A stretch of DNA of 64,000 bases from Botryllus schlosseri (Eukaryota): positions 21,762,001 to 21,826,000 of the forward strand of contig CM119382.1 of NCBI GenBank assembly GCA_051294905.1, in the 5' to 3' direction. Every line of letters starts with the position of its first letter. The stretch's first letter is position 1. Position numbers and translations under genes: made by a program. Of this stretch, positions 3,288 through 37,300 are shown one piece after another. The notes beneath the pieces were generated by a model. That model was not told the DNA's origin, did not search any database, and saw only the letters and a list, made by a program, of their open reading frames with translations.

Positions 3288-3691
3288 TCAGTACTTCTTC
3301 ATTGCCTCTTCGTAGACGACGTAATCGTCGTACATGACTTTCCGTAATTTAAGGACAGCTTTTTCATGAAGAAAGTCCTTGGTTTTAGTTCTTGTTTTAT
3401 TTGGCGCAGCGGAATTTTTCATTTCCTGCCAGGTTTTCACAGCCCCTCCGAAGAAATCCGAAATGATGGTTTCAAACAAGCTCAGCGTGCCTTCGATCTC
3501 TTTAGTCAGTCCTATAACTAAATAGATATCGCGAATGCGTTTCTTGGCTAGTTCCACTCGATCTGGCGAAGTCGAATCGTGGCAAACCGGATCGAATCGA
3601 CAAAAATAGTTCGTATAATATTGTGTAATAATTAAGTCGTTTCAAAACGCTTCCTCGTTCGTTACGCATTTGTTGATGTGGATCTAGCATT
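3288..3691 (-). pseudogene. 3' half of a uronyl-2-/heparan-sulfate-2-O-sulfotransferase-like (Sulfotransfer_2) pseudogene
   Basis: Minus frame reads INKCVTNEEAF*NDLIITQYYTNYFCRFDPVCHDSTSPDRVELAKKRIRDIYLVIGLTKEIEGTLSLFETIISDFF...YDDYVVY, collinear with the UST/HS2ST C-terminal half as I recall it (DINEC..YFCG.C..ALERAK..VG). In-frame TGA at 3642-3644. Runs up to the insertion point. Confidence 0.8.
3686..3691. repeat. Left target-site duplication AGCATT
   Basis: Identical hexamer at 18357-18362 directly after the right terminus. Confidence 0.95.
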
Positions 3692-4027
3692 AGTAGTATG
3701 AGTAATGGGCGATTTGCCCGCATGCACCCTATTTACTTAAACAAACAAGAATTATCAATATAATAAACAGTGAAGGAATTAGCTCATTCTCAGTTTTGCA
3801 GCAATACTGGAGGGGAATTCCCTTCTGACTGTGCGGCAATTAAAAAAGGGGGAATAATTACAGATAGAGAGAAAACGAACAAGGAATCTGGATTGACCTT
3901 TGTACTCAGACATGAGACTGGAGTACTTCTCCTTGTACTTTTCCACTCGCCTCCTGATTATAATACATTGTAATTTTACTGTATTTTTCCACGATTCACA
4001 GCTGACTTCGGTCGTACACGACGGTGA

Positions 4028-4411
4028 TCATAGTTGCCTGCCCTGACCTGTTGTTCCGTGGTCCAATTTCGTGGCTTGGGAACAATAACCCGTAAAACTG
4101 GTTGACTTGTTATTCCGCGGTTGATTCATTTTCGTGTACGGTGGGTCATAGGAATAATTGTCGGTCGTGACGTAAGTATAGTTTTCTTCTGATCTGTGAG
4201 ATCCTGGTGCGTGTTTTAGGTGTCCATACGTTCGGCAGTGTAAGGTGACGCTTGTGGTCTGTCTCATACTGTCGTACCCGCTTGCTTTGTTGTTCAGCCA
4301 GACAGTAACGAGAAATGATCTGTTATTATTATAAATATGTGTGTCATTTCGAGTCATACCGAGAATCAGAATGAATGTCCTAGTAGAAATTTGTATTAAG
4401 CGACCCGACAT
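4028..4411 (-). CDS. Hypothetical 127-aa subterminal ORF, left-arm copy
   Basis: ATG-initiated and open in both arms despite 8 substitutions and an in-frame 6-bp indel. No recognisable domain. Confidence 0.3.
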   Translation of the reverse strand: MSGRLIQISTRTFILILGMTRNDTHIYNNNRSFLVTVWLNNKASGYDSMRQTTSVTLHCRTYGHLKHAPGSHRSEENYTYVTTDNYSYDPPYTKMNQPRNNKSTSFTGYCSQATKLDHGTTGQGRQL

Positions 4412-4796
4412 AGATTAGCTTAAATAAAGTAACATTATGAATATAATAAGTAATTAAACAAATAGCTGATTCTCAATTTTGCTCGCATCAACGTGTTAAC
4501 AACCAGTATTACGTACCTAGTATTCGGTGCAAGCAACAAATGTGGCTGTTCCATACCTATACCGCGTTCTAGCGTCTTCATAAGGACAGACAGTCCCAAC
4601 CAAACAATGTATTTATGATGGGTTCTTTTACTGCTTCACGTCTGGTCAAGCGTAATCGTGCCGGTGCTTGTAAATGATATACAATTTACCGCGGCATATT
4701 ATTTTTGTATGCTGTATAATGTACACGAGGTACAACTTGAATCGATCAGTTGGCGAACTAATGCTTTACCCGTCTGTACGATCGATCGCGAGCTCA

Positions 4797-5085
4797 CCAC
4801 GCACTTGTCGGTCGAGAGCGACTCATTTCGCTATAGACAATCAGTTGTGTTCGCGTGTACCGTAACATATCCTCAACACTTGTTATGCCAACACCTCCAA
4901 GCATATTTACAATATCATGCTAAGGAACTATTGCTTCGGCAGCCACGCACTGTCGTTCGAATTCGACTAATTTCGCTGCAGACAATCAGTTGTGCTCGTG
5001 TGTGCCGTAACATATCCTCAACACATGTTATGCCAACACCGCCGAGCATATTTGCAGGATCATACTACGGATATATTGACTCGAC
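4797..5085. repeat. Diverged tandem duplication, unit about 145 bp (mirror at about 16957-17245)
   Basis: GACAATCAGTTGTG at 4836 and 4981; CGTAACATATCCTCAACAC.TGTTATGCCAACACC occurs twice. Confidence 0.85.
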
Positions 5086-5443
5086 AGAGTGTTACTATAG
5101 AAATTAAACATGGAATGGCAACGATCAATTTTGCAGCTTCGCTCCGCTTCGCCGGGGCTGGAATGAAGAATTGTTTTGCGTAAGCGACTGTAGGATTTCT
5201 GGCAACCCAAAAGCAATCTTCCCGAGCGCAGAAATTATTGAATCTGGTCTTGATCGAAAGCTACTGTTGCACCGATTCCGAAAATATAAATTAAAATATT
5301 GATCGTGTGCTGATCCACCTAGAATATGTCCTCCAAGTCTGAAATATCGGCATTGTTTAGAACAATCGGGTAACCGCAACACAATTGCCATAACAATGAC
5401 CCGTTGGGATCAGTGGGCTGACCTTATTTGGCTGAAACGCGCT

Positions 5444-5938
5444 CGGTGGTGCAATAATGACAATGAATTGTGGTAGATCATACGTTATGCGATCTATAGC
5501 CTGAGGTGAGGTGTAAAGTAGAGGGGGAGATTTCGAAATCGGAATCCACTGCGACTATAGGATTGCAAAATCAAAGTCCAAAAAATCCGACTGGCACGTA
5601 AAGTACTGGTTTCTCCATATATTAGGCTGGGTAAAATGTAACATAAATCCAACTCTCAAAGGCACTGCTGTAAGGGGAGTGTCGTTGTACATTAATTTGC
5701 GTACAGCGAAACTTTGTATGCGGTGGTGCAATAATGAGGATGAATTGTGCCAGATCACGTGATGCAATCTAGCCTGCTTTCGGTGAGGTGTAAAGATGAG
5801 CGGGGAAATTTCGAAATCTGACTCCACCCGGACTCGGGTTGCTAAATCAAAGTCCAAAAAATCCGGCTGGCTCGTAAAGTCCTGTTATTTCCACATGTTG
5901 TGAGGGTAAAATATAGCATAAATCCGACTCTCAAGGCC
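5444..5938. repeat. Diverged tandem duplication, unit about 277 bp (mirror at about 16105-16598)
   Basis: CGGTGGTGCAATAATGA at 5444 and 5721; downstream blocks GGTGAGGTGTAAAG, TTTCGAAATC and AATCAAAGTCCAAAAAATCCG recur at the same spacing. Confidence 0.85.
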
Positions 5939-7370
5939 ATTTGGCTGCATCCAGACTGGCTTCGCTGAAAACTGATGAAATCTGGGCCGGGTCCGGAGAT
6001 GTTTCGTGACCTCCTCCGGCCAGACAAGATTGTTCTGCTGTAATATAGGTGTCGTTGTATAATAATTTACGTACAAGGAGACTTGGTATCGACCCTTTGG
6101 CGGAATTCTGTTTGGTTCGTCTGTACAGGTGTTATTAGTGCGATCAGATTTGGCACCTCAAGGAGTATATTGGTAAAAATCACACAACGATGACAATAAC
6201 TTTACCGGTCAACATGCGGTCAACGGTCAACGATGCGGTGTGATGTACGTAAATCAGCTGTGATCAATCGAGCGTGACACAATCGCTGTCAGTCATCAAT
6301 CTGCGACTTGACAAAACTCGCGTTTTCGGGTTGACAGCAACACATTGCGATATATTTGATGTCCCCGTCGACCCTCCTATTTTAATAGGGTTACCATGCG
6401 GCCTCATTTAGGGGAGCATATGTCCTCCATTTCCCAGATATGTCACCCAATTCACCTAAATGTACTCTCTTTCTGTCAGTTTGTCCTCCTTGTTAGCTCA
6501 ACATTTCCAAAAAAACACCACGAGTAACGCAAAATGTGGGCCTAGATTACGAAAAGTCGGGTATTTACGTAGCCAAATCGGGAAAATGACCCTATGATGG
6601 TATTGTGCAGGCTATTACGTGGATACGTGGGCGTGTGTAAACATGTGAATAGTAAAAGCGCCCCAAACTACCGTTACATGAAAAAAGATCGAGCGCACTC
6701 GACCATGACGGGGTATACCCACCTTAGTACAGCCAAATGATCCCATGTCGTACCGGGAATAGCCGAGGTGGTGGTACATCATTCTCACAAAATGTACTTT
6801 GGAACGCGTGTGAAATCGACATCGTCCGCTACTCGACTGACGCAAGTCGCCACTGCAGTCCCTCTCTGTGTATACACAATGTGCTGAGCACTGCAGATCC
6901 AGACGAGACTACGCATTCTGGCGAGGTTATCGAGATAGCTGGAGCGATTTACAACACATGCTACATTTACTTCAAACGGAATGACAAAATATGGTTTTGG
7001 AGTACTCAAGTAGTTTTAAGGGAATGTCAGTATCGTGATATCGCTTTCTATCCTAATTATAAAAGAGTAGGTCCCCATAAAACTGTCGAGCTCAAGCACG
7101 TTGGTAACTGTGATAGTAGACAAAACTGACTCGAGTACCTCAGAAATAGTGACTGTATTTCGTTGCTGACCACGCGCCTGCTTATTCACACCGACTGACT
7201 CTCCTAGTAAGCAACTGCGCCCCCGTCATCTTCTTATTGCCCAAATAATTTTACAATTCACGAAATCCAATCTCATTTGTCGATAGTTTTATCAGCACAA
7301 AAGTCACAGTTACACAAGTCTCGTAAATAGGTGTCGATACACTACAATCGTTTTATCGCCACTATTCAAC

Positions 7371-8549
7371 TCATAGCCCGATCACACGACTGACGTTTCC
7401 GCAGATCAATTTTTGACGTTTGATCAACTCTTGCCTGGTTTTGGGGTTTCTAATCACAGGGCGATTGAGATTCGGGTGTGTCTTTTCGATACGTTGCGCA
7501 AACTCGATACCTTTCGTTCGGAGTACGTATTCACACTGCGGAAACCATTTTGCATGTTCTGTCCAAACCTCGTCTTCACGGTCCCAACGAAGCCCGCCGT
7601 CACAGTAAAAGCATTTGGTTCTGTCCGAATCAACGTAGTAAAACCCCGCTTTTGCTAACTGTTCAACACTAGCTCTAATTTTATTCGGTTCCCAGCCCTT
7701 GTCGAACGTTGCGATTCTTTTTGACAACGACGACATGAGAGGGTTCACGGGTTTAAGACAAGGAAATAGTTGCTCAAGACATCGCTTTTCGTCCTCGGAG
7801 GGTTCCTCTGGTTCTTGCAGATGTAAAGTGAGACGTCGTATTTTGTCGTCAAGCAACTTATCCAAATTGTCTCGTTCGTACTCGGTTAACGCCAAATTCC
7901 CCGAATCGTCGCCACGTGCGAAACAACAATCCGGGCGATACGTCAAGTGTATTTCAGATATATCGTCTGTAGGCCTCCAATTGCGTAGAACGCCGGAGCA
8001 TTTGAAGCACTGCGTTCTGTCCAGGTCACCGAGGTAGAATAAACCTTGTTTTGCCAACTCGCCGACCGCCCGTGGTATGGGATAGCTGGGCCATTTCTCA
8101 AAGGTTTCGCGACGCTTCGACTCCTTTCGCAAGTCGAGATTCCTAACCCGATACTCGTGCTCTTGATCAACGATATTCGCAAAGTTGATGTTGGCGTTTC
8201 CAGCGGCTTTAAACTGTCTCAGTAAACTTTTGAAATTCGATTTCACAATAGGTATGTTCAACGCGTCTCGTACACAATTCGCGTCATGACGCCGTGCACT
8301 CGACCCGGTCCATCTTTCGAGGTACGCACTGCACCCAAAGCATTTGATTTTGTCTTCAAATCCTAGCCAGTAGTATCCCTCAGACGCTAAATCGGTGCGT
8401 GTTGCGTATGATACTTTAGAGAATTTGGCGAACGTGGCGAGTCTGTATAATTCAGTGCGGTGTGAACCGGAAGCGATATACACTCGTTTCTGTCCGGGCG
8501 GATCAGAGTATCTCTCCATTGACGATATGCCAAGCTCTTTCATAAACAT
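7371..8549 (-). CDS. iap: Inhibitor of apoptosis protein, 3 BIR domains, no RING, intronless (392 aa), left-arm copy
   Basis: Three BIR repeats with zinc ligands: RLATF..GYY..KCFGC..H..C; RRETF..GLFY..QCFKC..W..H..C; RIATF..LAKAGFYY..KCFYCDGGL.W..WTEHAKWFPQC. Confidence 0.95.
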   Translation of the reverse strand: MFMKELGISSMERYSDPPGQKRVYIASGSHRTELYRLATFAKFSKVSYATRTDLASEGYYWLGFEDKIKCFGCSAYLERWTGSSARRHDANCVRDALNIPIVKSNFKSLLRQFKAAGNANINFANIVDQEHEYRVRNLDLRKESKRRETFEKWPSYPIPRAVGELAKQGLFYLGDLDRTQCFKCSGVLRNWRPTDDISEIHLTYRPDCCFARGDDSGNLALTEYERDNLDKLLDDKIRRLTLHLQEPEEPSEDEKRCLEQLFPCLKPVNPLMSSLSKRIATFDKGWEPNKIRASVEQLAKAGFYYVDSDRTKCFYCDGGLRWDREDEVWTEHAKWFPQCEYVLRTKGIEFAQRIEKTHPNLNRPVIRNPKTRQELIKRQKLICGNVSRVIGL

Positions 8550-10247
8550 GGAGTACTAAGACAGAGCTTTTTGTGTCTAAACCTGTACCATAGCTCACAC
8601 ATATATATTCCTAGTTTATCCTTGCGAGCTCTATCGATTACTGGTTGGTTGTACTTTTATGTGAGATTGACAACCGTTGGCTGTCGCTATTGCACCATTT
8701 ATATATGTGTTATACCAGGAGCGGTCAACTTCTGCAGCCCGCGGGGCGTGTATAGCATAATTAGGTACTCGGTGGTGCGAATTGCTGAATCGATACATTA
8801 TTCGACCACCGATCAGCATATGCCAGGAATAAATCGTATTCAATCAATGTATTTTAACAACAGCAATGTCAATGCAAAGCCGTATCTCGCCGATATTAAC
8901 GAGGACAAAGTGGATTTGAGAACAGTATTTTTATACAGGCACCGCCATGTCTGCTTCTCTCTCACGGTGCAATACTTAAATAAGATTTCATAGTGGTCTA
9001 TAAGCCCGATACCCTAAATTGACAGAGACATCAGTTCAATAAAGTTGTTTTCTAACGACATTACAGAGAACAACGCGTACCAGTAAACACAAACCGAATT
9101 GTCCCACTGTTGCGTCAATTCACCGCCGACTCAGTATGAGACACTCTCGACCAGCGAATGTACATTAGGCAACCGAAACACGTGACCTTGCGAAGGGGGG
9201 TGTTTTCGATAACACCGATACGGCAACTTAATTCTTTCTACTGACAATGTGATGGAGAGCGGCTTAATTCATCAGACAAAGACTGGAGGCAACAATAACT
9301 AGCAAACACAAATCTAATGGCCACACCGACATTCACAGGTATTCGATAGACCCGAAAATACCAACGTCACCCAACTGCTGTAATGACACGGGTACGATGC
9401 GGGGTACGAAGCATTTTGAACGGTGTTGCTCAGTTGCGGTTCTTGGCCTTCCAAGACCTCTGTTAGCATCAGTCTATCTCACTGTTTGGAGTACCAATGC
9501 CAAACGTCGTAATAGTGGTCACTCGGTCATGTGTAGAATATAGAAATTGACGCCTGGCCTATTTGCAAGACCTCATGGCTTTGGCAAACTTACTAAAGCG
9601 GAAATTCACAAAGTCACTTGCGTACGTGCTTTCATGCCTTTGAATGTTTGTTATCATCGAGTCTGGTCATAAATAGACATGGGGACAAATTTGATGCGTT
9701 CAGCACAATATACGTTTACCACATCTCATTCCGGACCGTAACCGATCGTTTACCGCACCCTCTATATGGCAAACGTCGCCTTTGCTCATAGGTAAGCCGA
9801 TGATCTGTGAAAACACATGCGCTAACGTGCCATTTCGTTATTCCTTCAACGTCACATGACCGCCTATGAAGGCTTTTTGGGTACCCACCAATACAGTGTT
9901 GAAACGTGATCCATAGGGACCCCACTGCGTGCTATACGCCTAAATAAATATGTTTACTCGAGTATACACCTGGTGTGGAGCAGTGAAGTGGATGCAGAAA
10001 GTAAATTAGACAACGCAAACCAGTTGACAACGTCGATTAATATACGGGGGTTGATACATTTTGTCAAGTGACTTTTGAATGAGTGTTATTTGTTTGGTGT
10101 TTGATGGATAAGATTGTATTCAATCATAAACTACTAATATACTTCTTGTGGTGCTAAACCTGATTATACAGATGAATCAGACAGTATTCCGCCAATTGGG
10201 AGTAGTTGCCCGTCGTCGTGATTGACCTTCTAGTTCGCGGTGGTAAC

Positions 10248-11795
10248 GAAGAATGTATAACAGAAAGTGTAAATCGTACAATGACGACAACTAACTGTTG
10301 TCAGTCGCCCACAACAATACAGCTAACCAGTAATCTATAGAGCTTTCACGAATAAACTAGGAGTATAAACGGTTAGTCCTAACTTGTCGTTCCACGACTG
10401 AATAATCCAATTTCATCGCGACGGGGATCGGTAGTAGTTGCCCGTACGATATAGTGAATCAATCTCAAAACCTAATGCAATCCTAATTCAGCAAAATTTC
10501 ACAAATACTTTTTTTTTTCTAAATCCTAATCAATGCTCATCTCTGGCGTATACGTACAAGTTTTGTCAAAACAACAGATTGATGGAGCGTGGCTTACATT
10601 GATTGCGACACACGATCACAGCTTCTTCTGGTGGAATTTTTCAATGGTAAATTCAAGGCTAGGTCGAGGGGGTCAAACAGCATTTCTCTCACGGTAGCAC
10701 TCCGCCGAGTCAATACGTCCATAGTATGATATTTGTCGCAAGTATGTTTTGTTGGGGGTGCTGAGGATATTTTGCGGTACGCGTTTTTTCACAGGTTGCA
10801 AGTTACGATAGGGGAAGACGTATTTTTATATTTATACCGCTAATTTCATTAGATTGACTAGAAAACAATGTCATTTCTTCTGACTCGACTACCGAAATAC
10901 CCGTCAATTACTTGTGTTGTGCGAGTTAACTAAATGAAAGGTCACTCACCGAAATCGACCAGACCTACATTTCGCGTTATTCGTGGTGTTTTTTGTTATT
11001 TTAGGCTGAAAATAGGGAAAAATTTACAAAAAAGGAAGACATTTGGGCGAAGGTTGTACATATCTAGGAGAAGGAGGAGGACTTTGGTAACCCTATAAAT
11101 ATTGATCGATGTGAACATCAGCTGTATCGCATTGCTGTCAACCCGCTCCAATATGCGAGTTTAGTCAAACAGGAGATTGACGACTGACACCGTTTGTGTC
11201 ACATTCGATTGATCACAGCTGGTTTGTGTACATCACACCCCATCGAAATTACAAGCATTCGAACGAGTGATGACCGTTAGGTTTGCTGACAGTTAAAGTT
11301 GTTATCGTTGTGAGATGGATAAGATTTTGCCAATATACTTCTTGTGGTGCTAAACCCTACTGCAATAACAACACATGTACAGACAAATCAAACAGAATCC
11401 CGCCAGTGGTTCGATACAAAGTTTCACTGTACACGCAAATGAATATGCAACGAAACCCCGCATATCGTGTAATGACAGCAGAATCATTTTGCCTGGACGG
11501 AGGTGGTCACGAATCGGTTCCGTACCCCCGAATTTCATCGGTTTTGAGTGAAATCGGACTGGATACGGCCACGTATCTTTGAGAGTCAGTCATATACTAG
11601 ATTCTGTCCTCACAATATGTCGGAATAACAGGACTTTGCGTACCAGCCTGGATTTACCCCAATTCGCAGTTCAAACAGGCTTTAGGTACACCCGATAACG
11701 CGCGTCCACCACTCCAAACACATAGTTACGGGGTATGGCGGGGACCCGGAAACTCGGGGCATAGCTTATTAGTAATTTTACGCGATCATTTTTTT
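10248..11795. other. Unique 1548-bp loop (spacer) of the palindrome, containing diverged copies of arm sequence
   Basis: Symmetry stops after GGTAAC at 10247 and resumes at GTTAC 11796. 10960-11655 resembles 15500-16185; 10255-10368 resembles 13328-13439. Confidence 0.85.
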
Positions 11796-13337
11796 GTTAC
11801 TACCGCGAACTAGAAGGTCAATCACGACGACGGGCAACTACTCCCAATTGGCGGAATACTGTCTGATTCATCTGTATAATCAGGTTTAGCACCACAAGAA
11901 GTATATTAGTAGTTTATGATTGAATACAATCTTATCCATCAAACACCAAACAAATAACACTCATTCAAAAGTCACTTGACAAAATGTATCAACCCCCGTA
12001 TATTAATCGACGTTGTCAACTGGTTTGCGTTGTCTAATTTACTTTCTGCATCCACTTCACTGCTCCACACCAGGTGTATACTCGAGTAAACATATTTATT
12101 TAGGCGTATAGCACGCAGTGGGGTCCCTATGGATCACGTTTCAACACTGTATTGGTGGGTACCCAAAAAGCCTTCATAGGCGGTCATGTGACGTTGAAGG
12201 AATAACGAAATGGCACGTTAGCGCATGTGTTTTCACAGATCATCGGCTTACCTATGAGCAAAGGCGACGTTTGCCATATAGAGGGTGCGGTAAACGATCG
12301 GTTACGGTCCGGAATGAGATGTGGTAAACGTATATTGTGCTGAACGCATCAAATTTGTCCCCATGTCTATTTATGACCAGACTCGATGATAACAAACATT
12401 CAAAGGCATGAAAGCACGTACGCAAGTGACTTTGTGAATTTCCGCTTTAGTAAGTTTGCCAAAGCCATGAGGTCTTGCAAATAGGCCAGGCGTCAATTTC
12501 TATATTCTACACATGACCGAGTGATCACTATTACGACGTTTGGCATTGGTACTCCAAACAGTGAGATAGACTGATGCTAACAGAGGTCTTGGAAGGCCAA
12601 GAACCGCAACTGAGCAACACCGTTCAAAATGCTTCGTACCCCGCATCGTACCCGTGTCATTACAGCAGTTGGGTGACGTTGGTATTTTCGGGTCTATCGA
12701 ATACCTGTGAATGTCGGTGTGGCCATTAGATTTGTGTTTGCTAGTTATTGTTGCCTCCAGTCTTTGTCTGATGAATTAAGCCGCTCTCCATCACATTGTC
12801 AGTAGAAAGAATTAAGTTGCCGTATCGGTGTTATCGAAAACACCCCCCTTCGCAAGGTCACGTGTTTCGGTTGCCTAATGTACATTCGCTGGTCGAGAGT
12901 GTCTCATACTGAGTCGGCGGTGAATTGACGCAACAGTTTGACAATTCGATTTGTGTTTACTGGTACGCGTTGTTCTCTGTAATGTCGTTAGAAAACAACT
13001 TTATTGAACTGATGTCTCTGTCAATTTAGGGTATCGGGCTTATAGACCACTATGAAATCTTATTTAAGTATTGCACCGTGAGAGAGAAGCAGACATGGCG
13101 GTGCCTGTATAAAAATACTGTTCTCAAATCCACTTTGTCCTCGTTAATATCGGCGAGATACGGCTTTGCATTGACATTGCTGTTGTTAAAATACATTGAT
13201 TGAATACGATTTATTCCTGGCATATGCTGATCGGTGGTCGAATAATGTATCGATTCAGCAATTCGCACCACCGAGTACCTAATTATGCTATACACGCCCC
13301 GCGGGCTGCAGAAGTTGACCGCTCCTGGTATAACACA

Positions 13338-13345
13338 TATATAAA
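13338..13345 (+). promoter_or_regulatory. Candidate TATA box upstream of the right-arm IAP (mirror at 8698-8705)
   Basis: TATATAAA about 150 bp upstream of the ATG at 13494; position and sequence only. Confidence 0.3.
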
Positions 13346-13493
13346 TGGTGCAATAGCGACAGCCAACGGTTGTCAATCTCACATAAAAGTACAACCAACC
13401 AGTAATCGATAGAGCTCGCAAGGATAAACTAGGAATATATATGTGTGAGCTATGGTACAGGTTTAGACACAAAAAGCTCTGTCTTAGTACTCC

Positions 13494-14672
13494 ATGTTTA
13501 TGAAAGAGCTTGGCATATCGTCAATGGAGAGATACTCTGATCCGCCCGGACAGAAACGAGTGTATATCGCTTCCGGTTCACACCGCACTGAATTATACAG
13601 ACTCGCCACGTTCGCCAAATTCTCTAAAGTATCATACGCAACACGCACCGATTTAGCGTCTGAGGGATACTACTGGCTAGGATTTGAAGACAAAATCAAA
13701 TGCTTTGGGTGCAGTGCGTACCTCGAAAGATGGACCGGGTCGAGTGCACGGCGTCATGACGCGAATTGTGTACGAGACGCGTTGAACATACCTATTGTGA
13801 AATCGAATTTCAAAAGTTTACTGAGACAGTTTAAAGCCGCTGGAAACGCCAACATCAACTTTGCGAATATCGTTGATCAAGAGCACGAGTATCGGGTTAG
13901 GAATCTCGACTTGCGAAAGGAGTCGAAGCGTCGCGAAACCTTTGAGAAATGGCCCAGCTATCCCATACCACGGGCGGTCGGCGAGTTGGCAAAACAAGGT
14001 TTATTCTACCTCGGTGACCTGGACAGAACGCAGTGCTTCAAATGCTCCGGCGTTCTACGCAATTGGAGGCCTACAGACGATATATCTGAAATACACTTGA
14101 CGTATCGCCCGGATTGTTGTTTCGCACGTGGCGACGATTCGGGGAATTTGGCGTTAACCGAGTACGAACGAGACAATTTGGATAAGTTGCTTGACGACAA
14201 AATACGACGCCTCACTTTACATCTGCAAGAACCAGAGGAACCCTCCGAGGACGAAAAGCGATGTCTTGAGCAACTATTTCCTTGTCTTAAACCCGTGAAC
14301 CCTCTCATGTCGTCGTTGTCAAAAAGAATCGCAACGTTCGACAAGGGCTGGGAACCGAATAAAATTAGAGCTAGTGTTGAACAGTTAGCAAAAGCGGGGT
14401 TTTACTACGTTGATTCGGACAGAACCAAATGCTTTTACTGTGACGGCGGGCTTCGTTGGGACCGTGAAGACGAGGTTTGGACAGAACATGCAAAATGGTT
14501 TCCGCAGTGTGAATACGTACTCCGAACGAAAGGTATCGAGTTTGCGCAACGTATCGAAAAGACACACCCGAATCTCAATCGCCCTGTGATTAGAAACCCC
14601 ATAACCAGGCAAGAGTTGATCAAACGTCAAAAATTGATCTGCGGAAACGTCAGTCGTGTGATCGGGCTATGA
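13494..14672 (+). CDS. iap: Inhibitor of apoptosis protein, 3 BIR domains, no RING, intronless (392 aa), right-arm copy
   Basis: Same ORF as 7371-8549. Two differences found: 14602 (Lys/Ile) and 14210 (synonymous Arg). Confidence 0.95.
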   Translation: MFMKELGISSMERYSDPPGQKRVYIASGSHRTELYRLATFAKFSKVSYATRTDLASEGYYWLGFEDKIKCFGCSAYLERWTGSSARRHDANCVRDALNIPIVKSNFKSLLRQFKAAGNANINFANIVDQEHEYRVRNLDLRKESKRRETFEKWPSYPIPRAVGELAKQGLFYLGDLDRTQCFKCSGVLRNWRPTDDISEIHLTYRPDCCFARGDDSGNLALTEYERDNLDKLLDDKIRRLTLHLQEPEEPSEDEKRCLEQLFPCLKPVNPLMSSLSKRIATFDKGWEPNKIRASVEQLAKAGFYYVDSDRTKCFYCDGGLRWDREDEVWTEHAKWFPQCEYVLRTKGIEFAQRIEKTHPNLNRPVIRNPITRQELIKRQKLICGNVSRVIGL

Positions 14673-17630
14673 GTTGAATAGTGGCGATAAAACGATTGTA
14701 GTGTATCGACACCTATTTACGAGACTTGTGTAACTGTGACTTTTGTGCTGATAAAACTATCGACAAATGAGATTGGATTTCGTGAATTGTAAAATTATTT
14801 GGGCAATAAGAAGATGACGGGGGCGCAGTTGCTTACTAGGAGAGTCAGTCGGTGTGAATAAGCAGGCGCGTGGTCAGCAACGAAATACAGTCACTATCTC
14901 TGAGGTACTCGAGTCAGTTTTGTCTACTATCACAGTTACCAACGTGCTTGAGCTCGACAGTTTTATGGGGACCTACTCTTTTATAATTAGGATAGAAAGC
15001 GATATCACGATACTGACATTCCCTTAAAACTACTTGAGTACTCCAAAACCATATTTTGTCATTCCGTTTGAAGTAAATGTAGCATGTGTTGTAAATCGCT
15101 CCAGCTATCTCGATAACCTCGCCAGAATGCGTAGTCTCGTCTGGATCTGCAGTGCTCAGCACATTGTGTATACACAGAGAGGGACTGCAGTGGCGACTTG
15201 CGTCAGTCGAGTAGCGGACGATGTCGATTTCACACGCGTTCCAAAGTACATTTTGTGAGAATGATGTACCACCACCTCGGCTATTCCCGGTACGACATGG
15301 GATCATTTGGCTGTACTAAGGTGGGTATACCCCGTCATGGTCGAGTGCGCTCGATCTTTTTTCATGTAACGGTAGTTTGGGGCGCTTTTACTATTCACAT
15401 GTTTACACACGCCCACGTATCCACGTAATAGCCTGCACAATACCATCATAGGGTCATTTTTCCGATTTGGCTACGTAAATACCCGACTTTTCGTAATCTA
15501 GGCCCACATTTTGCGTTACTCGTGGTGTTTTTTTGGAAATGTTGAGCTAACAAGGAGGACAAACTGACAGAAAGAGAGTACATTTAGGTGAATTGGGTGA
15601 CATATCTGGGAAATGGAGGACATATGCTCCCCTAAATGAGGCCGCATGGTAACCCTATTAAAATAGGAGGGTCGACGGGGACATCAAATATATCGCACTG
15701 TGTTGCTGTCAACCCGAAAACGCGAGTTTTGTCAAGTCGCAGATTGATGACTGACAGCGATTGTGTCACGCTCGATTGATCACAGCTGATTTACGTACAT
15801 CACACCGCATCGTTGACCGTTGACCGCATGTTGACCGGTAAAGTTATTGTCATCGTTGTGTGATTTTTACCAATATACTCCTTGAGGTGCCAAATCTGAT
15901 CGCACTAATAACACCTGTACAGACGAACCAAACAGAATTCCGCCAAAGGGTCGATACCAAGTCTCCTTGTACGTAAATTATTATACAACGACACCTATAT
16001 TACAGCAGAACAATCTTGTCTGGCCGGAGGAGGTCACGAAACATCTCCGGACCCGGCCCAGATTTCATCAGTTTTCAGCGAAGCCAGTCTGGATGCAGCC
16101 AAATGGCCTTGAGAGTCGGATTTATGCTATATTTTACCCTCACAACATGTGGAAATAACAGGACTTTACGAGCCAGCCGGATTTTTTGGACTTTGATTTA
16201 GCAACCCGAGTCCGGGTGGAGTCAGATTTCGAAATCTCCCCGCTCATCTTTACACCTCACCGAAAGCAGGCTAGATTGCATCACGTGATCTGGCACAATT
16301 CATCCTCATTATTGCACCACCGCATACAAAGTTTCGCTGTACGCAAATTAATGTACAACGACACTCCCCTTACAGCAGTGCCTTTGAGAGTTGGATTTAT
16401 GTTACATTTTACCCAGCCTAATATATGGAGAAACCAGTACTTTACGTGCCAGTCGGATTTTTGGTCTTTGATTTTGCAATCCTATAGTCGCAGTGGATTC
16501 CGATTTCGAAATCTCCCCCTCTACTTTACACCTCACCTCAGGCTATAGATCGCATAACGTATGATCTACCACAATTCATTGTCATTATTGCACCACCGAG
16601 CGCGTTTCAGCCAAATAAGGTCAGCCCACTGATCCCAACGGGTCATTGTTATGGCAATTGTGTTGCGGTTACCCGATTGTTCTAAACAATGCCGATATTT
16701 CAGACTTGGAGGACATATTCTAGGTGGATCAGCACACGATCAATATTTTAATTTATATTTTCGGAATCGGTGCAACAGTAGCTTTCGATCAAGACCAGAT
16801 TCAATAATTTCTGCGCTCGGGAAGATTGCTTTTGGGTTGCCAGAAATCCTACAGTCGCTTACGCAAAACAATTCTTCATTCCAGCCCCGGCGAAGCGGAG
16901 CGAAGCTGCAAAATTGATCGTTGCCATTCCATGTTTAATTTCTATAGTAACACTCTGTCGAGTCAATATATCCGTAGTATGATCCTGCAGATATGCTCGG
17001 CGGTGTTGGCATAACATGTGTTGAGGATATGTTACGGCACACACGAGCACAACTGATTGTCTGCAGCGAAATTAGTCGAATTCGAACGACAGTGCGTGGC
17101 TGCCGAAGCAATAGTTCCTTAGCATGATATTGTAAATATGCTTGGAGGTGTTGGCATAACAAGTGTTAAGGATATGTTACAGTACACGCGAACACAACTG
17201 ATTGTCTATAGCGAAATGAGTCGCTCTCGACCGACAAGTGCGTGGTGAGCTCGCGATCGATCGTACAGACGGGTAAAGCATTAGTTCGCCAACTGATCGA
17301 TTCAAGTTGTACCTCGTGTACATTATACAGCATACAAAAATAATATGCCGCGGTAAATTGTATATCATTTACAAGCACCGGCACGATTACGCTTGACCAG
17401 ACGTGAAGCAGTAAAAGAACCCATCATAAATACATTGTTTGGTTGGGACTGTCTGTCCTTATGAAGACGCTAGAACGCGGTATAGGTATGGAACAGCCAC
17501 ATTTGTTGCTTGCACCGAATACTAGGTACGTAATACTGGGGGTTAACACGTTGATGCGAGCAAAATTGAGAATCAGCTATTTGTTTAATTACTTATTATA
17601 TTCATAATGTTACTTTATTTAAGCTAATCT

Positions 17631-18020
17631 ATGTCGGGTCGCTTGATACAAATTTCTACTAGGACATTCATTCTGATTCTCGGTATGACTCGAAATGACA
17701 CACATATTTATAATAATAACAGATCATTTCTCGTTACTGTCTGGTTTGACAACAAAGCAAGCGGGTTCAAGTACGACAGTATGAGACAGACCACAAGCGT
17801 CACCTTGCACAGCCGAACGTATGGACACCTAAAACACGCACCAGGATCTCACAGATCAGAAGAAAACTATACTTACGTCACGACCGACAATTATTCCTAT
17901 GACCCACCGTACACGAAAATGAATCAACCGCGGAACAACAAGTCAACCAGTTTTACGGGTTATTGTTCCCAAGCCACGAAATTGGACCACGGAACAACAG
18001 GTCAGGGCAAGCAACTATGA
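17631..18020 (+). CDS. Hypothetical 129-aa subterminal ORF, right-arm copy
   Basis: Mirror of 4028-4411 with two extra codons (TTC AAG). No recognisable domain. Confidence 0.3.
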   Translation: MSGRLIQISTRTFILILGMTRNDTHIYNNNRSFLVTVWFDNKASGFKYDSMRQTTSVTLHSRTYGHLKHAPGSHRSEENYTYVTTDNYSYDPPYTKMNQPRNNKSTSFTGYCSQATKLDHGTTGQGKQL

Positions 18021-18356
18021 TCACCGTCGTGTACGACCGAAGTCAGCTGTGAATCGTGGAAAAATACAGTAAAATTACAATGTATTATAATCAGGAGGCG
18101 AGTGGAAAAGTACAAGGAGAAGTACTCCAGTCTCATGTCTGAGTACAAAGGTCAATCCAGATTCTTTGTTCGTTTTCTCTCTATCTGTAATTATTCCCCC
18201 TTTTTTAATTGCCGCACAGTCAGAAGGGAATTCCCCTCCAGTATTGCTGCAAAACTGAGAATGAGCTAATTCCTTCACTGTTTATTATATTGATAATTTT
18301 TGTTTGTTTAAGTAAATAGGGTGCATGCGGGCAAATCGCCCATTACTCATACTACT

Positions 18357-18362
18357 AGCATT
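18357..18362. repeat. Right target-site duplication AGCATT
   Basis: Identical to 3686-3691. Confidence 0.95.
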
Positions 18363-18804: not shown

Positions 18805-19752
18805 CAGTGCTGGGATGACTCGAGTCATGACTTGACTCGAGTCAGACTCGAGTTACCTTTTTTGTATGACTTGACTTGACTCGAGTCAATTTGCTAAAAT
18901 GACTTGACTTGACTTGACTCGGCGTATCAGAAATGTCGATTGATTCGTGACTCGGAGTAAAATTGAAGAGTCAATTTCAAGTCATCAAGTAATCGGTGTG
19001 GACAAAAATTACCCAATCTTGTATATGTTCGGATTGTTCGCGGAACGCTGGTGTAACCCGTGATATCGACCAATCATTCAATGATCGTGCGTTTTACTGA
19101 GCCTCCATTGTTCTCTCTCAAATAAATTGACAGCAAACGAAGTGATCGAAGCTACAGTGTACATTGTCGTAAACTAGTATAGTAAAGTAATTTGAGAGCA
19201 AAATGTCTATTTCTGTTCTCTGTTCTTACCTTAACCAAGCCTTTTGTTTTATTGAAATAGAATTCGAATATAGTTTTTGAAGTCCTCAACCATTAGCACA
19301 GCTCGAATTGCATCATATTAGTTTGTAAATGGGTAATGAATTGCAACTATTAACAACTGGTAACTATAAACTGATGAGGCTATGAAATTACTTACGTAGC
19401 TCCGCAGTTCTAGGTAAATGTGAGCGATACAGCGCCTTCTTACGTGTATAATAAACTCTATATTCGTTCATCGGTTCAAAATCAATGACCACCCAATCTG
19501 TATTTCCGACAGCTAGCAAAATGCAATGACGTAATCATGCCTCAGACTTCAAAAAGGCAACTTGACTTGAATTGTGACTTGACTCTTGACTTGACTTGAC
19601 TCGACGTGACTCGAGTAACCTTCAAAAATCGAGTGACTTGACTCGACTCGAGTCACCTTCAAAAATCGATTGACTTGACTTGACTCGAGTCAAAATTTGC
19701 AATGACTCGAAATGACTCGTGATTCGAAAGTAGTGACTTGATCCCATCACTG
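18805..19752. mobile_element. hAT-type MITE, family A (GACTTGACTCGAGTC subterminal arrays)
   Basis: TIR CAGTGCTGGGAT...ATCCCATCACTG; exact 8-bp TSD GTACAATA. Confidence 0.92.
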
Positions 19753-20470
19753 GTACAATATACATTGTACCTCGTTAGGTGACCGCTCTATGCGAAGGAA
19801 AGCGGTATATATAGGTTGTGGGTATCCGACAATGAAAGTAAAACGGGAATCAAACAGTAAGAAAGCCTTATCTTGCCGGATGGTTACGTGTATATTGATA
19901 ATAACAGCTCATATCTAATTTCACCATTTCTCCTGAATCAGTTAAAAACGGAATATCTGCGTGAAAAGCATATTTAGGCAAAGTTAAAACCAAACTATAT
20001 TTAATATTTTCCGATTTATTTGATATGATAGTGACAGTAAACATACAAAAGTTTAATTAGTCTGCCGATATGAATTAATAAATTGATTCGCTATGAATGT
20101 TACTATATCAGAAAATTCGTTTCGCGTCTGTGACTAATAAATCTAACAGACTAAGGGGTGTAAGTAACGGGTTAGATGAAAGTTACTGCCAGGGGGGAGA
20201 GAAAATCCTTTATTGAATCAACATCGATTATGGAGGTTTTTTGAAATATATACAGCTGTTTTCAAATCTTCCTCGCGTCCCGCGCGATTCAATGTCCATA
20301 AATGTTTTGATTTAAACAGGGACACCTATCCTCTAAGAAAAAATAAGGCAAAATTCATGGAGATAGGTATATAATCGCCGTTCATTTCGACGCCACAACA
20401 TCAATACATGTGAAGTGTGCGCAGACGCGCAACTCCACGAAGTGCGTTGCCGAAAATCGTGGCCGAATAG

Positions 20471-34300: not shown

Positions 34301-37300
34301 GCGGATCGGAAGCCGCAGTTTGCCCACCTCTTGCATATAGGCGAAGGCAATATCTCCGAAGATTTGTAACAATACCAAATATGAATGGATCAAGTAGACA
34401 TATGGATGGTTATTTAGGTACCGCAGCTGGCTTTTCTCACACGGATATCAATCAGTCCGAGGTAGACTTCGGCAACTATAGATAATTCTAGTTGTATAAT
34501 TAGACGAACTTACAGCGAAACGCTAGTAATCTGATTCTAATCTACTTTGTGAAATGTTTCAATTTCATTTTAATTCTAATCCAATTTCTCGTTTTCCTGA
34601 AAACGATACAGGAAAACTGTATAGCGTGAAACGACCCAAGCTTGGTGTACTGACATTTGTCATTGTCATACCTCGTGATAAAGAACTCTGATTTGATATA
34701 AATTGAAGACGATTTTTGTTGTTTAGAGTATTAGCGAATGTAGTAATACTAAATCTAATTCTTATGTATAGAAAAGATGTGTAGCTCTAATTGTAATTCC
34801 AATCTAATTAGGAAAAGCTAAAAAATGTCCAATTGTTCAACCCTTGTCCAAGGGATATGTGAAGGATATGTAGCGGTATGGATTTGGATTACAGATTTAA
34901 CCGTTACTTGGGTTTGCGATTAGCGTTAGAAGATATGGTCAATTATGGAGTTGATAGTGTCAAGTTTCATAAAATGTGGCGGATTCAGCTAAAATGTTAA
35001 ATTGATGGGGGTCACGTTTGCGGTGCTCACGGTCACACTTATAATAGAGGTGAAACTCTGACTATTTGCTAAATCCCAAGAAGCACCATATTTAATTATT
35101 TGCCAAGAAATCATGCCACTTAAAAGGTCTAAAGGTGTAGTACACATAATAATGGTGCGTACATACGAAACAATTTCCAATACAAAGTGGGGGGAGGGGC
35201 TCAGCAGCAAGGCGGAGTTTCAAAATAGCTTGATTAGGATACATCGTATTTTATCTCTGTTTGCACATTTATAAATCAGAAGTACATAATTATATTTTTG
35301 AGTGTTTCTTATTATCTATGAAGTAATTATATGCAATAATTCAAACTCCGACTCGAACAATGCGGTGTACTACGTCTTGATTCACGAGAACGCTCGTAGA
35401 TCATTTACCAATACCTGCCATTTGTGGGATGACGGTTGTCATTCGGCATTCAATAGCACCCCGTTGTGAAATTATTAATGTATAGAGTTAGATTAATGAT
35501 TGGATAATCTCATTATAATTAAATAGATCCTCACCACTTGGACGGTTACCGCATGTACAGCAGCTTCCTAGCGCAACTGAACAACGAATCGGTGGTGGAG
35601 TATAACTCCTTTCGAAATTCATGGAAGACGAACTTTCTGCGGTTGAAACGACTTGTCTTGGTGGGTGGACCAGATGATGGAGTGATCACGCCATGGCAAA
35701 GTTCGCAATTTGGTGCTTTTGACTCTGATGAAAACGTCGTTCCCATGAGAAACTTACAGGTATTGCATCAAAACTTATTTTAATAGCATCGATATCGTAG
35801 TCTTTTCGAAATTAACTTGATATGTAGTGACTTGATTAAACTATGTAGCCTACGTCTGCGCGAGTGCGTACATTAATAAAATGTTTATTTTTTTAGAATA
35901 CACCCGCGTGTACGTCAAATGTGTTAGATGTAAAACTACTCCTTGATTTATTTCATATTTTTTGAAGTAGAGGCTAGTGTTTGGGCAGATTCCTATCACT
36001 ATTGTGATAGAAATTATCATAACAGACCGGCGATGCTGCCAAAGTATCACCAGCACCGTAACTGCCGCACCCCAAACCCCCAAATTGGGAGGGGCCCGAG
36101 CTCGAAGGGGGCCCAAATTTTTTTCGTGAATTAGGATAAATCATAGAGAATTTTTTGAAAATTTATGCAATTTTTTCAAAAATTTTTCGCGCAGGGCGCG
36201 AATTCATGTATAGCTATTAGGGTTGTCCATAATTTGGAAAATCTCACAAATGCTGCGTATCCATGTCTCATTCTATAGATTATTGATAAAAAAACGTCAA
36301 TGAGCCTGCAATAAGCTCACAGGAAAGTCGTTAAGATTTGTCTAAATGCGTTTGAAAGTGGCTGCCACAGAGTGGGCGTGGCTGCCACAGAGTGGGCGTG
36401 CCAGCGACCATAGAACGGCGAGAAGACTAGTAATCACGAAATTCCGTCTCATGATTGGTTAATCAGTTATGCTTGAATGATCGCGACCGCAGCAACTTGC
36501 TGATTACGTGCTTCTACTCTTCAAAGAAGTTTGCTAACGGCGATGATTCTGTAAGGGCATTGTAGGTTGGTGACTTAACAATAATATGTGACACCTGGTG
36601 ATTTAATGTTTTAGTTTAAAAGTCGGTTACGATAGGTTTATAGCAGCAATAGCCTATTGCAGACATGGCCGAGGTGTAACAGCGAATAATTGTGAACTTG
36701 TAGAAGTGAGTATAAATCCCAGAAGCATCTAGTCTAATATGCTTGCGATTACGCCGAGTCCTCCTGCTTCCTGGGTGCAGGTAAAGTATTAGCCATCGCC
36801 AAACTGGTGCAGCACAGCATGTGAGACGGATGCTGCGGGGCACAATCCTGTATGCTTATAAGATGATATGTGGACCGACCAGGTAGCTTACATTGGAACT
36901 CTGAAGAAGTGTAACTACCGCATCGATTAAATGCATTTATATATCCATGTCTGGTTTGATTCAAACATTAGTCGTGATGCAGCCAGTGATGATCCATGAT
37001 TCATTTAGGAGAGGCTAAGCTCTTCAAGCAAACTGGAGTTTTGCTGACCCTACCAGCATAGCCTGTGCTTACCTATAGATCTCTTTCTGTGGTATGATTG
37101 AGAACTTTGACAGCACTTACGGGTAGATTCATTATGCTGTTAGAATCGGACAGGTGCCACGCATAAACGGACGATTCAGCCCATCCTTAGAGCATTCAAG
37201 ACCTAAATTATATACCACGACCAGAGCCTAATAAGATCAGACAAAGTATGATCACTGTTAAGATTTATATTTGAAATCAGTGATGGTACATCCCTTCTGA

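What the first reader, a model, noticed from the sequence alone, without database searches (positions are those of the whole stretch)
7371..14672. Twin intact, intronless three-BIR IAP genes are the only recognisable cargo
Seen: two divergently oriented 392-aa ORFs, each with three BIR domains retaining C-C-H-C ligands, no RING and no introns, differing at only two positions I could find. Surrounding host genes are intron-rich. Established: IAPs inhibit caspases and are accessory genes of baculoviruses and other large DNA viruses. Inference: the gene is a virus-style captured anti-apoptotic gene kept intact while replication genes were lost. The element could spread and double IAP dosage, offering a route to the IAP family expansions reported in some marine invertebrates, or protect cells during helper activation.
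Basis: partly seen in the sequence, partly recalled or inferred. Interest (0 to 1): 0.8.

Follow-up and report, generated by a model that had tools for sequence, protein, structure and literature searches.

The report
Twin IAP genes in Maverick-type palindrome
A 14.7-kb mobile-element insertion in a sea-squirt genome has the end signature of Maverick/Polinton virus-like transposons but no viral genes; its only gene is an intronless, RING-less copy of a host-type apoptosis inhibitor, present twice only because the element is almost entirely one large inverted repeat.

Summary
Two 392-aa ORFs (7371-8549 minus, 13494-14672 plus) each carry three BIR domains and no RING. They differ at 2 nt (1 aa). 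They are the only recognisable coding sequence in the element.

They are not independent genes. Both lie in 6.56-kb inverted-repeat arms (99.56% identical) of one insertion, 3692-18356. The insertion ends in 5'-AGTAGT...ACTACT-3' and is flanked by a perfect 6-bp duplication (AGCATT). This is the end motif and target duplication published for vertebrate Mavericks. No Maverick core gene or remnant is detectable in the window.

The IAP is not virus-like in sequence. It nests inside stolidobranch tunicate cellular IAPs (40-49% identity, against 14-27% to viral IAPs). It lacks at least 7 introns present in the Styela homologue, so it is a processed host-lineage copy.

It has lost the RING, and two of its three BIRs have zinc-ligand spacings found in none of 120 homologues.

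Arm divergence is concentrated in the outer ~1.2 kb. This suggests an ordinary short TIR that was later extended inward across the gene.

Selection, expression and spread are untested, because only one copy could be seen.

The parts
3686..3691 (.). Left target-site duplication AGCATT
   Evidence: Read directly. It is identical to 18357-18362. Chance of a 6-bp match at fixed adjacency is 1/4096.
3692..18356 (.). Whole insertion, 14,665 bp, ends 5'-AGTAGT...ACTACT-3'
   Evidence: The 20-nt terminus occurs only at the two ends of the element in the window. The end motif and 6-bp TSD are as published for vertebrate Mavericks.
3692..10253 (.). Left arm of the inverted repeat (6,562 bp)
   Evidence: There are 29 substitutions (20 transitions, 9 transversions) and 2 indels against the right arm, giving 99.56% identity. 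14 of the 29 substitutions lie in the outer ~1.2 kb.
11790..18356 (.). Right arm of the inverted repeat (6,567 bp)
10254..11789 (+). Unique centre (1,536 bp). It contains older, IAP-less diverged copies of two arm segments, in the orientation of the right arm.
   Evidence: Segment 10255-10367 is 78% identical to 13328-13439. Segment 10961-11655 is 70% identical to 15500-16184. No ORF of 100 aa or more and no Pfam hit.
7371..8549 (-). IAP copy L, 392 aa, three BIR domains, no RING, no intron
   Evidence: BIR1 is about 8265-8477, BIR2 about 7917-8129 and BIR3 about 7524-7739.
13494..14672 (+). IAP copy R, 392 aa. It differs from copy L by 2 nt (1 aa).
   Evidence: BIR1 is about 13566-13778, BIR2 about 13914-14126 and BIR3 about 14304-14519.
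13328..13439 (+). 113-bp segment upstream of the IAP start, with a TATATAAA-like box. Its mirror copy is at 8604-8715 (-), and a third, diverged copy sits at the edge of the centre.
   Evidence: A promoter role is inferred, not shown.
4797..5078 (.). 145-bp tandem repeat (1.9 copies) in the arm, mirrored at about 16955-17245
18357..18362 (.). Right target-site duplication AGCATT

Best explanation
The region is one insertion (3692-18356) of a non-autonomous, Maverick/Polinton-type element in a tunicate genome. It was integrated as a unit, and the integration left a 6-bp target duplication. That signature is expected from a Maverick-type integrase supplied in trans, but trans supply is inferred. 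About 90% of the element is a 6.56-kb inverted repeat. The most likely history is an ordinary terminal inverted repeat of about 1.2 kb or less that was later extended inward by copying one arm onto the other, through strand switching or fold-back synthesis or gene conversion (inferred). This turned one accessory gene into two mirror-image copies. The accessory gene is a processed (mRNA-derived) copy of a stolidobranch-type cellular 3-BIR/RING IAP that has lost its RING. If it is expressed, the product could only act stoichiometrically, with BIR2/BIR3 binding IAP-binding motifs or caspases, and not as an E3 ligase. It would then be a stable decoy or inhibitor (inferred). My sub-confidences are as follows. 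The twin genes are a by-product of the inverted repeat: 0.95. The IAP derives from a tunicate-lineage spliced gene: 0.85. The insertion is a Maverick-type non-autonomous element: 0.75. The repeat grew by inward extension: 0.6. The protein is currently functional: 0.35.
For: Shown: the inverted repeat and its bounds. Shown: ends AGTAGT/ACTACT and a perfect 6-bp TSD, equal to the 5'-(AGT)2//(ACT)2-3' motif plus 6-bp TSD reported for vertebrate Mavericks, whose accessory regions lie next to the TIRs. Nematode Mavericks carry 2-5 kb of host-derived cargo next to a TIR. The host is a tunicate: the flanking galactosyltransferase exon has Ciona and Clavelina as its best named hits. On IAP origin, the best hits are Styela, Ciona and Phallusia cellular IAPs at 40-49% identity. 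In the NJ tree it pairs with P0010 at 96% bootstrap and sits inside the Styela clade at 86-92%. Its BIR1 shares the tunicate-type H-x3-C spacing. At least 7 intron positions of the Styela gene fall within the colinear ORF. In the BIR part it keeps 75 of 95 highly conserved columns, similar to bona fide tunicate IAPs. The AlphaFold2 model has mean pLDDT 79.6, with BIR2 and BIR3 mostly above 90. The arm differences look like real mutations, with 20 transitions against 9 transversions and only 2 indels. They are concentrated in the outer ~1.2 kb (14 of 29; p=2e-4 before correction for scanning cut points). That length is within the 46-1,447 bp range of known Maverick TIRs.
Against: No Maverick core gene or fragment (polymerase, integrase, protease, ATPase, capsid) is present in the element or anywhere else in the 64-kb window. 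Family assignment therefore rests only on 6+6 bp of end motif and TSD. The TIR is about 4.5 times longer than any reported for vertebrate Mavericks. Only one copy was seen, so mobility as a family is unproven. No literature record of an IAP in a Polinton or Maverick was found. Several points count against function. The RING is absent without any trace. BIR1 and BIR3 have ligand spacings seen in none of 120 homologues, and BIR3 has a second single-residue deletion relative to all aligned homologues and to solved cIAP1 BIR3. There is no AATAAA within about 1 kb downstream. There are no expression data. The divergence gradient could instead reflect more frequent gene conversion near the palindrome centre.
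Confidence: 0.6

Rival explanations
1. Passenger pseudogene-in-waiting. The element is as described, but the IAP is a non-functional processed copy. Its ORF is open only because the copy, and the arm duplication, are young.
For: The RING has been lost. BIR1 and BIR3 have unique in-frame deletions. There is no canonical poly-A signal nearby. The ORF is not significantly less diverged between arms than the rest: 2 differences against 5.2 expected, Poisson p about 0.1. Intronless IAP retrocopies are common in other invertebrates, and many show no regulated expression.
Against: The protein is only 46-49% identical to its nearest known relatives, yet it keeps conserved BIR columns as well as genuine tunicate IAPs and has a 392-codon open frame. 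If much of that divergence had accrued neutrally, stop codons would be expected (inference). A TATA-like box lies about 150 bp upstream. The sister sequence P0010 sits on what looks like a transcript contig.
Confidence: 0.45
2. A virus-style anti-apoptotic gene is maintained by selection for the element's benefit, and the element spreads and expands the host IAP family.
For: The ends are Maverick-type. Known large DNA viruses of invertebrates carry IAPs (one search lists baculo-, nudi-, entomopox-, irido-, asco- and malacoherpesvirus IAPs). A recent survey argues that dispersed IAP duplicates are often transposon-associated.
Against: There is no sequence affinity to viral IAPs. No second copy of the element is in the window or in any searchable collection. 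There is no evidence of selection or expression. The twin copies are explained by the inverted repeat alone.
Confidence: 0.15
3. Not a Maverick derivative. It is either a cut-and-paste TIR transposon of another superfamily or a host inverted segmental duplication that happens to end in AGTAGT.
For: No Maverick protein remnant is present. The TIR is far longer than known Maverick TIRs.
Against: An exact (AGT)2/(ACT)2 motif together with a perfect 6-bp TSD has a joint chance of roughly 4^-12 once the repeat ends are fixed. Ginger2, another family with a 6-bp TSD, has TGTNR termini and RTATAY targets, which do not fit. A segmental inverted duplication would not create a direct 6-bp repeat at its outer ends.
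Confidence: 0.12
4. Hairpin-RNA source. Read-through transcription of the 6.5-kb inverted repeat with its 1.5-kb loop yields long double-stranded RNA. Small RNAs made from it silence related elements, and the IAP sequence with them. The inverted duplication, rather than the protein, is then what matters.
For: Geometry only: near-perfect arms and a short spacer. From my own knowledge, inverted partial duplications of transposons are known to act as silencers in plants.
Against: No transcript or small-RNA data are available. The two IAP genes point outward, so their own transcripts do not cross the centre.
Confidence: 0.1
5. Assembly artefact: a fold-back or chimeric long read created a false palindrome.
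For: Large near-perfect palindromes are a known artefact class of long-read assemblies (my own knowledge).
Against: The flanks are not palindromic. Homology stops exactly at the AGTAGT ends, which are bounded by a direct 6-bp repeat. The arms differ by 29 substitutions with a 2.2:1 transition bias and only 2 indels. There is a 1.5-kb unique centre with its own older paralogous segments.
Confidence: 0.05

Closest known systems
Vertebrate Mavericks/Polintons (Barreat & Katzourakis 2021, PMC8097293)
   Same: The 5'-(AGT)2//(ACT)2-3' end motif, a perfect 6-bp target duplication, overall size within their 12.7-24.6 kb range, and accessory genes located next to the TIRs.
   Different: None of the eight core genes is present. 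The TIR is 6.56 kb, against 46-1,447 bp. The host is a tunicate. The only gene is an IAP.
Cargo-carrying Mavericks of nematodes (Widen et al., bioRxiv 10.1101/2022.07.12.499685)
   Same: Host-derived cargo lies between a TIR and the element interior.
   Different: The nematode elements keep polymerase, integrase, capsid and fusogen genes. Their cargo genes (proteases, kinases) often keep introns. Here the cargo is intron-free, duplicated inside the TIR, and is the only gene.
IAPs of large invertebrate DNA viruses (baculo-, nudi-, entomopox-, irido-, asco- and malacoherpesviruses)
   Same: A BIR protein carried by a virus-like mobile genome as an intron-free gene.
   Different: Sequence identity is only 14-27% over multi-domain alignments, against 40-49% to tunicate cellular IAPs. 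Most of the viral IAPs listed are named as RING-bearing IAP-3 types with one or two BIRs, whereas this one has three BIRs and no RING.
Intronless (retroposed) IAP duplicates in bivalves and arthropods (PMC8917759, PMC7831173, PMC13159474)
   Same: Processed, dispersed IAP copies. Those papers suggest transposon involvement in IAP expansion.
   Different: Those copies are attributed to retroposition or to nearby cut-and-paste transposons. None is described inside a Maverick-type element or as a mirror pair.
Cellular 3-BIR/RING IAPs of tunicates (Styela clava XP-type BIRC7-like/XIAP-like; P0001-P0005)
   Same: Colinear BIR1-BIR2-BIR3 order, the tunicate-type BIR1 ligand spacing class, and nesting in that clade.
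   Different: No introns, no RING, a shorter N-terminus, three in-frame deletions within BIR1 and BIR3, and a long branch.

Membership tests
Maverick/Polinton | 6-bp target-site duplication | tested here: met
   AGCATT at 3686-3691 and 18357-18362.
Maverick/Polinton | Terminal inverted repeats beginning 5'-AG, specifically (AGT)2...(ACT)2 in the chordate lineage | tested here: met
   AGTAGT at 3692 and ACTACT ending at 18356.
Maverick/Polinton | [quoted passage not shown] | tested here: not met
   No Pfam hit in any >=50-aa piece of the element or in any >=72-aa piece of the rest of the window.
Maverick/Polinton | Retrovirus-like (rve) integrase gene | tested here: not met
Maverick/Polinton | Morphogenesis module (major and minor capsid, packaging ATPase, adenain-like protease) | tested here: not met
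   Heavily decayed fragments shorter than 50 aa would have been missed.
Maverick/Polinton | TIR length in the reported range (46-1,447 bp) | tested here: not met
   The arms are 6,562 and 6,567 bp. The outer ~1.2 kb is the more diverged part.
Non-autonomous derivative of a Maverick family | Shares its termini with an autonomous element of the same genome | not testable with these tools
   The host genome is not in any searchable collection.
IAP (BIR-domain proteins) | At least one BIR domain with C-C-H-C zinc ligands | tested here: met
   Three BIR matches. Ligands are present in all three. PDB sequence matches to cIAP1/2, XIAP, ML-IAP and NAIP BIRs.
IAP, BIRC2/3/XIAP/BIRC7-type | C-terminal RING E3 domain | tested here: not met
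IAP (functional caspase or IBM binder) | Canonical ligand spacing and an intact peptide-binding groove in BIR2/BIR3 | tested here: inconclusive
   BIR2 is canonical. BIR3 has x15 instead of x16 plus one further single-residue deletion, yet it is modelled with high confidence. Binding cannot be tested here.
Viral IAP lineage | Nearest relatives are viral IAPs | tested here: not met
   None of the named proteins among the best 120 hits is viral. BFVD identities are 14-27%. IMG/VR scans found none.
LINE-mediated processed retrocopy | Loss of the parental introns | tested here: met
LINE-mediated processed retrocopy | 3' poly-A tract and flanking target duplications around the copy | tested here: not met
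   No A-run downstream of the stop. The arm-specific segment is bounded by non-A-rich sequence. Age could have erased both features.

The most novel reading that the evidence does not exclude
Tunicate Mavericks carry a host-derived IAP as a genuine accessory gene, as baculoviruses do. On this reading the palindromic, gene-less element is a defective genome formed by strand switching during protein-primed episomal replication and then integrated. It would be a genomic fossil showing that a chordate Maverick replicated as a virus-like linear DNA and had acquired an apoptosis inhibitor.
Probability: 0.2. Interest if true: 0.7.

Novelty: new variant of a known kind. Interest (0 to 1): 0.45.

Why it matters
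If the Maverick assignment holds, this is the first case I could find of an IAP carried by a Maverick/Polinton-type element; full-text searches returned nothing relevant. Capture of a host anti-apoptotic gene would then be shared between Mavericks and the classical large DNA viruses of invertebrates. It would also be a concrete DNA-level vehicle for dispersed, intronless IAP duplicates, which recent surveys suspect but have not tied to a particular element type. The extreme inverted repeat is a clean example of how terminal-repeat extension can double a cargo gene. As it stands the evidence is one copy with no expression or population data.

Tried and rejected
- **Exact-sequence look-up of both IAP variants:** not on record, so the host assembly and any other copies could not be reached.
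- **Scans for relatives of the element:** the 20-nt terminus gave no match in IMG/VR or in JGI metagenomes.
- **Scans for relatives of the IAP:** nothing in IMG/VR. The metagenome scan returned 80 loci (of 387 confirmed relatives), but the best alignments reach only about 38% identity and none has a long inverted repeat. They are not the same element.
- **RING remnant:** tblastn with C-termini and a RING HMM on all stop-to-stop pieces gave nothing above background. MAFFT placed the last ~20 residues under the pre-RING and RING columns. I treat that as forced global alignment, not evidence.
- **Decayed Maverick genes:** Pfam and PHROG screens were negative.
- **RNA genes:** the Rfam and tRNA searches were negative.
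- **dN/dS between the copies:** rejected as uninformative with only 2 differences. dN/dS against P0010 or Styela was rejected because synonymous sites are saturated at about 48% amino-acid identity.
- **Technical failures:** a Biopython bootstrap timed out and was replaced by my own NJ bootstrap. One BLAST self-comparison printed nothing and was repeated.
- **Literature:** searches for Polinton, Maverick or adintovirus together with IAP or BIR found no relevant paper.
- **Tree limits:** the tree has only vertebrate and one insect outgroup. Placement of the metagenomic IAPs (P0011, P0012, P0111) 'among tunicates' is therefore not established. Only the nesting of the window protein within the Styela group is claimed.


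Full report
**1. What is there**

The window holds two 392-aa ORFs at 7371-8549 (-) and 13494-14672 (+). Each has three BIR domains (Pfam PF00653, E=1.1e-46) and nothing else. The best solved-structure matches are the BIR domains of NAIP, cIAP1/2, ML-IAP and XIAP. The two ORFs differ at two nucleotides, one synonymous and one K/I replacement in the tail after BIR3.

**2. The two genes are one feature**

They sit in a very large inverted repeat.
- A gapped alignment gives arms 3692-10253 and 11790-18356, of 6,562 and 6,567 bp.
- The arms differ by 29 substitutions (20 transitions, 9 transversions) and 2 indels, which is 99.56% identity.
- A 1,536-bp unique centre (10254-11789) separates them.

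'Twin intact genes' is therefore a single observation seen twice. The second copy adds no independent evidence that the ORF is being kept open.

**3. The inverted repeat is a bounded insertion**

- Homology stops exactly at 5'-AGTAGT (3692) and ACTACT-3' (18356).
- The six bases outside each end are the same direct repeat, AGCATT.
- The 20-nt terminus occurs nowhere else in the window.
[quoted passage not shown] - Ginger2, another family with 6-bp duplications, has TGTNR termini and RTATAY targets, which do not fit.

The ends therefore say 'Maverick-type', and the direct repeat argues against an assembly fold-back. The transition-biased arm differences and the non-palindromic flanks argue the same way.

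**4. Nothing else is Maverick-like**

- No stop-to-stop piece of 50 aa or more in the left arm plus centre hits any Pfam or PHROG family.
- No Rfam family or tRNA is present.
- The rest of the window has only host-type domains: galactosyltransferase, palmitoyl thioesterase, EGF_CA in five pieces, Sushi and ephrin-receptor-like.

The element is non-autonomous, and its family assignment rests on ends plus TSD alone. The flanking galactosyltransferase exon has Ciona savignyi and Clavelina as its best named relatives, so the host is a tunicate not represented in the protein collections.

**5. Origin of the IAP**

- Protein search: the best hits are Styela clava, Ciona and Phallusia cellular IAPs (E down to 5e-106). 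Vertebrate BIRC2/3 follow at about 31% identity, and none of the named proteins among the best 120 hits is viral. In the multiple alignment, identity to the tunicate proteins is 41-49%.
- Structure search against viral proteins: many viral IAPs are found, but at 14-27% identity over multi-domain alignments. IMG/VR scans found no relative.
- Tree: in a neighbour-joining tree with 200 bootstraps the window protein pairs with P0010 (96%). P0010 is a BIR2-BIR3-RING protein on a short Logan contig that looks like a transcript. The pair nests within the Styela clava IAPs (92% and 86%), to the exclusion of Ciona and Phallusia.
- Ligand spacing: its BIR1 belongs to the H-x3-C spacing class seen only in this tunicate-type group.
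- Introns: the ORF is colinear with residues 53-476 of Styela P0001. That gene spans 6.6 kb and has at least seven introns inside this part.

The gene is therefore a processed copy of a host-lineage cellular IAP. It is 'virus-style' only in being intron-free and carried by a virus-like element. No poly-A tract or flanking duplication of a LINE-type retrocopy remains.

**6. State of the protein**

Points against function:
- The RING present in almost all relatives is absent without detectable trace.
- Only BIR2 has the canonical C-x2-C-x16-H-x6-C spacing. BIR1 is x14/x3 and BIR3 is x15/x6.
- Among 120 homologues these spacings never occur: 331 BIRs are x16/x6 and 11 tunicate-type BIR1s are x18/x3.
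- BIR3 carries a second single-residue deletion relative to all aligned homologues and to solved cIAP1 BIR3.
- There is no AATAAA within about 1 kb downstream.

In total there are three in-frame deletions within BIR1 and BIR3, plus loss of the RING.

Points for function:
- In the BIR part the protein keeps 75 of 95 highly conserved columns, similar to genuine tunicate IAPs.
- The AlphaFold2 model is confident for BIR2 and BIR3 (mean pLDDT 79.6).
- A TATATAAA-like box lies about 150 bp upstream of the start.

Whether the protein works is open. I put it at about 0.35. If it does work, it can only act by binding, not as an E3 ligase.

**7. History of the repeat**

- Arm differences are not uniform. 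Per kb from the outer end inward there are 12, 4, 3, 2, 1, 4 and 3 substitutions.
- 14 of the 29 lie in the outer ~1.2 kb (p=2e-4 before correcting for about 56 cut points).
- That length is within the normal Maverick TIR range.

This fits an ordinary TIR later extended inward by about 5.4 kb, across the accessory gene. Stronger gene conversion near the centre is an alternative explanation.

The centre is oriented like the right arm and holds older, diverged copies of two arm segments. A 113-bp piece just upstream of the IAP start is 78% identical, and a ~700-bp piece downstream of the gene is 70% identical. There is no IAP between them. The upstream-like piece begins exactly at the inner edge of the left arm. 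This shows that the element had internal paralogous modules before the large duplication. I could not decide whether the IAP-less module represents the state before capture or a later loss.

**8. Comparison with what is known**

- Mavericks with host-derived cargo next to a TIR are known in nematodes.
- IAPs are classic captured genes of large invertebrate DNA viruses.
- Intronless dispersed IAP duplicates, and a suspected role of transposons, are documented in bivalves and arthropods.

I found no report of an IAP in a Maverick or Polinton. This is best filed as a new variant of a known kind: a Maverick-ended, core-less element that is 90% inverted repeat and whose only gene is an IAP-derived three-BIR protein.

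**9. Limits**

- Only one copy was seen, from a host genome I could not reach.
- There are no expression or population data.
- The tree has few invertebrate outgroups.
- The claims about spread, dosage, family expansion and protection during helper activation remain speculation.
- The direct test of mobility lies outside what this report may propose.

**10. Slip**

Noticed in passing
L002 (ENA ERZ27241799 k141_360343) and L006 = L012 (JGI Ga0210059_1045429): Two syntenic metagenome contigs carry tightly packed, co-directional, intron-free ORFs. L006 carries two IAP genes: a full-length one (435 aa; its counterpart in L002 is 437 aa, BIR+RING) and a partial BIR+RING ORF at the contig edge. The neighbouring ORFs have no Pfam match. 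The context looks virus-like or like a dense gene array with IAPs.
   Followed up: partly
L009-L088 (JGI samples Ga0210059, JGI24158J21664, JGI24159J19872, JGI24021J15306, JGI24022J15233): A handful of related metagenome samples hold dozens of distinct intron-free IAP loci. The best alignments are about 29-38% identical to the window protein. Some are isolated in ORF-poor DNA (L028). One lies beside an LTR-retrotransposon remnant with zf-CCHC and RT_RNaseH domains (L035). This points to an unidentified eukaryote with a massive IAP expansion. None of the loci has a long inverted repeat.
   Followed up: partly
window 10201-10212, 10433-10444, 11831-11842: The 12-mer AGTAGTTGCCCG occurs three times (0.14 expected by chance), all within about 200 bp of the inner ends of the arms. 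It begins like the element terminus (AGTAGT). It may be a vestige of an older terminus or a binding-site repeat.
   Followed up: no
window 10254-11789: The centre of the palindrome is an older, IAP-less paralogue of the arm module. It has the upstream-like 113 bp and the downstream-like ~700 bp, with 594 unrelated bp where the arm has 2,060 bp including the IAP.
   Followed up: partly
window 36210-36504 and 37577-37851: A second, unrelated small element of about 1.65 kb has ~300-bp terminal inverted repeats (84-95% identical). Its flanks share the direct repeat CATGTAT, which suggests a 7-8 bp target duplication. It is probably a hAT- or P-like non-autonomous transposon.
   Followed up: partly
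window 18805-19755, 42457-43381, 46532-47411: A dispersed repeat family of about 0.9 kb has three direct copies at 66-92% identity. The first copy starts about 450 bp to the right of the element.
   Followed up: no
L003 (Logan SRR32906208_20410), protein P0010: The closest relative of the window IAP (96% bootstrap) is a 421-aa BIR2-BIR3-RING protein on a 1.6-kb contig. It comes from a run series that also yields a full-length Styela-like IAP on a single contig, so it is probably a transcript of another stolidobranch species. This fast-evolving IAP sub-lineage therefore exists with a RING elsewhere.
   Followed up: partly
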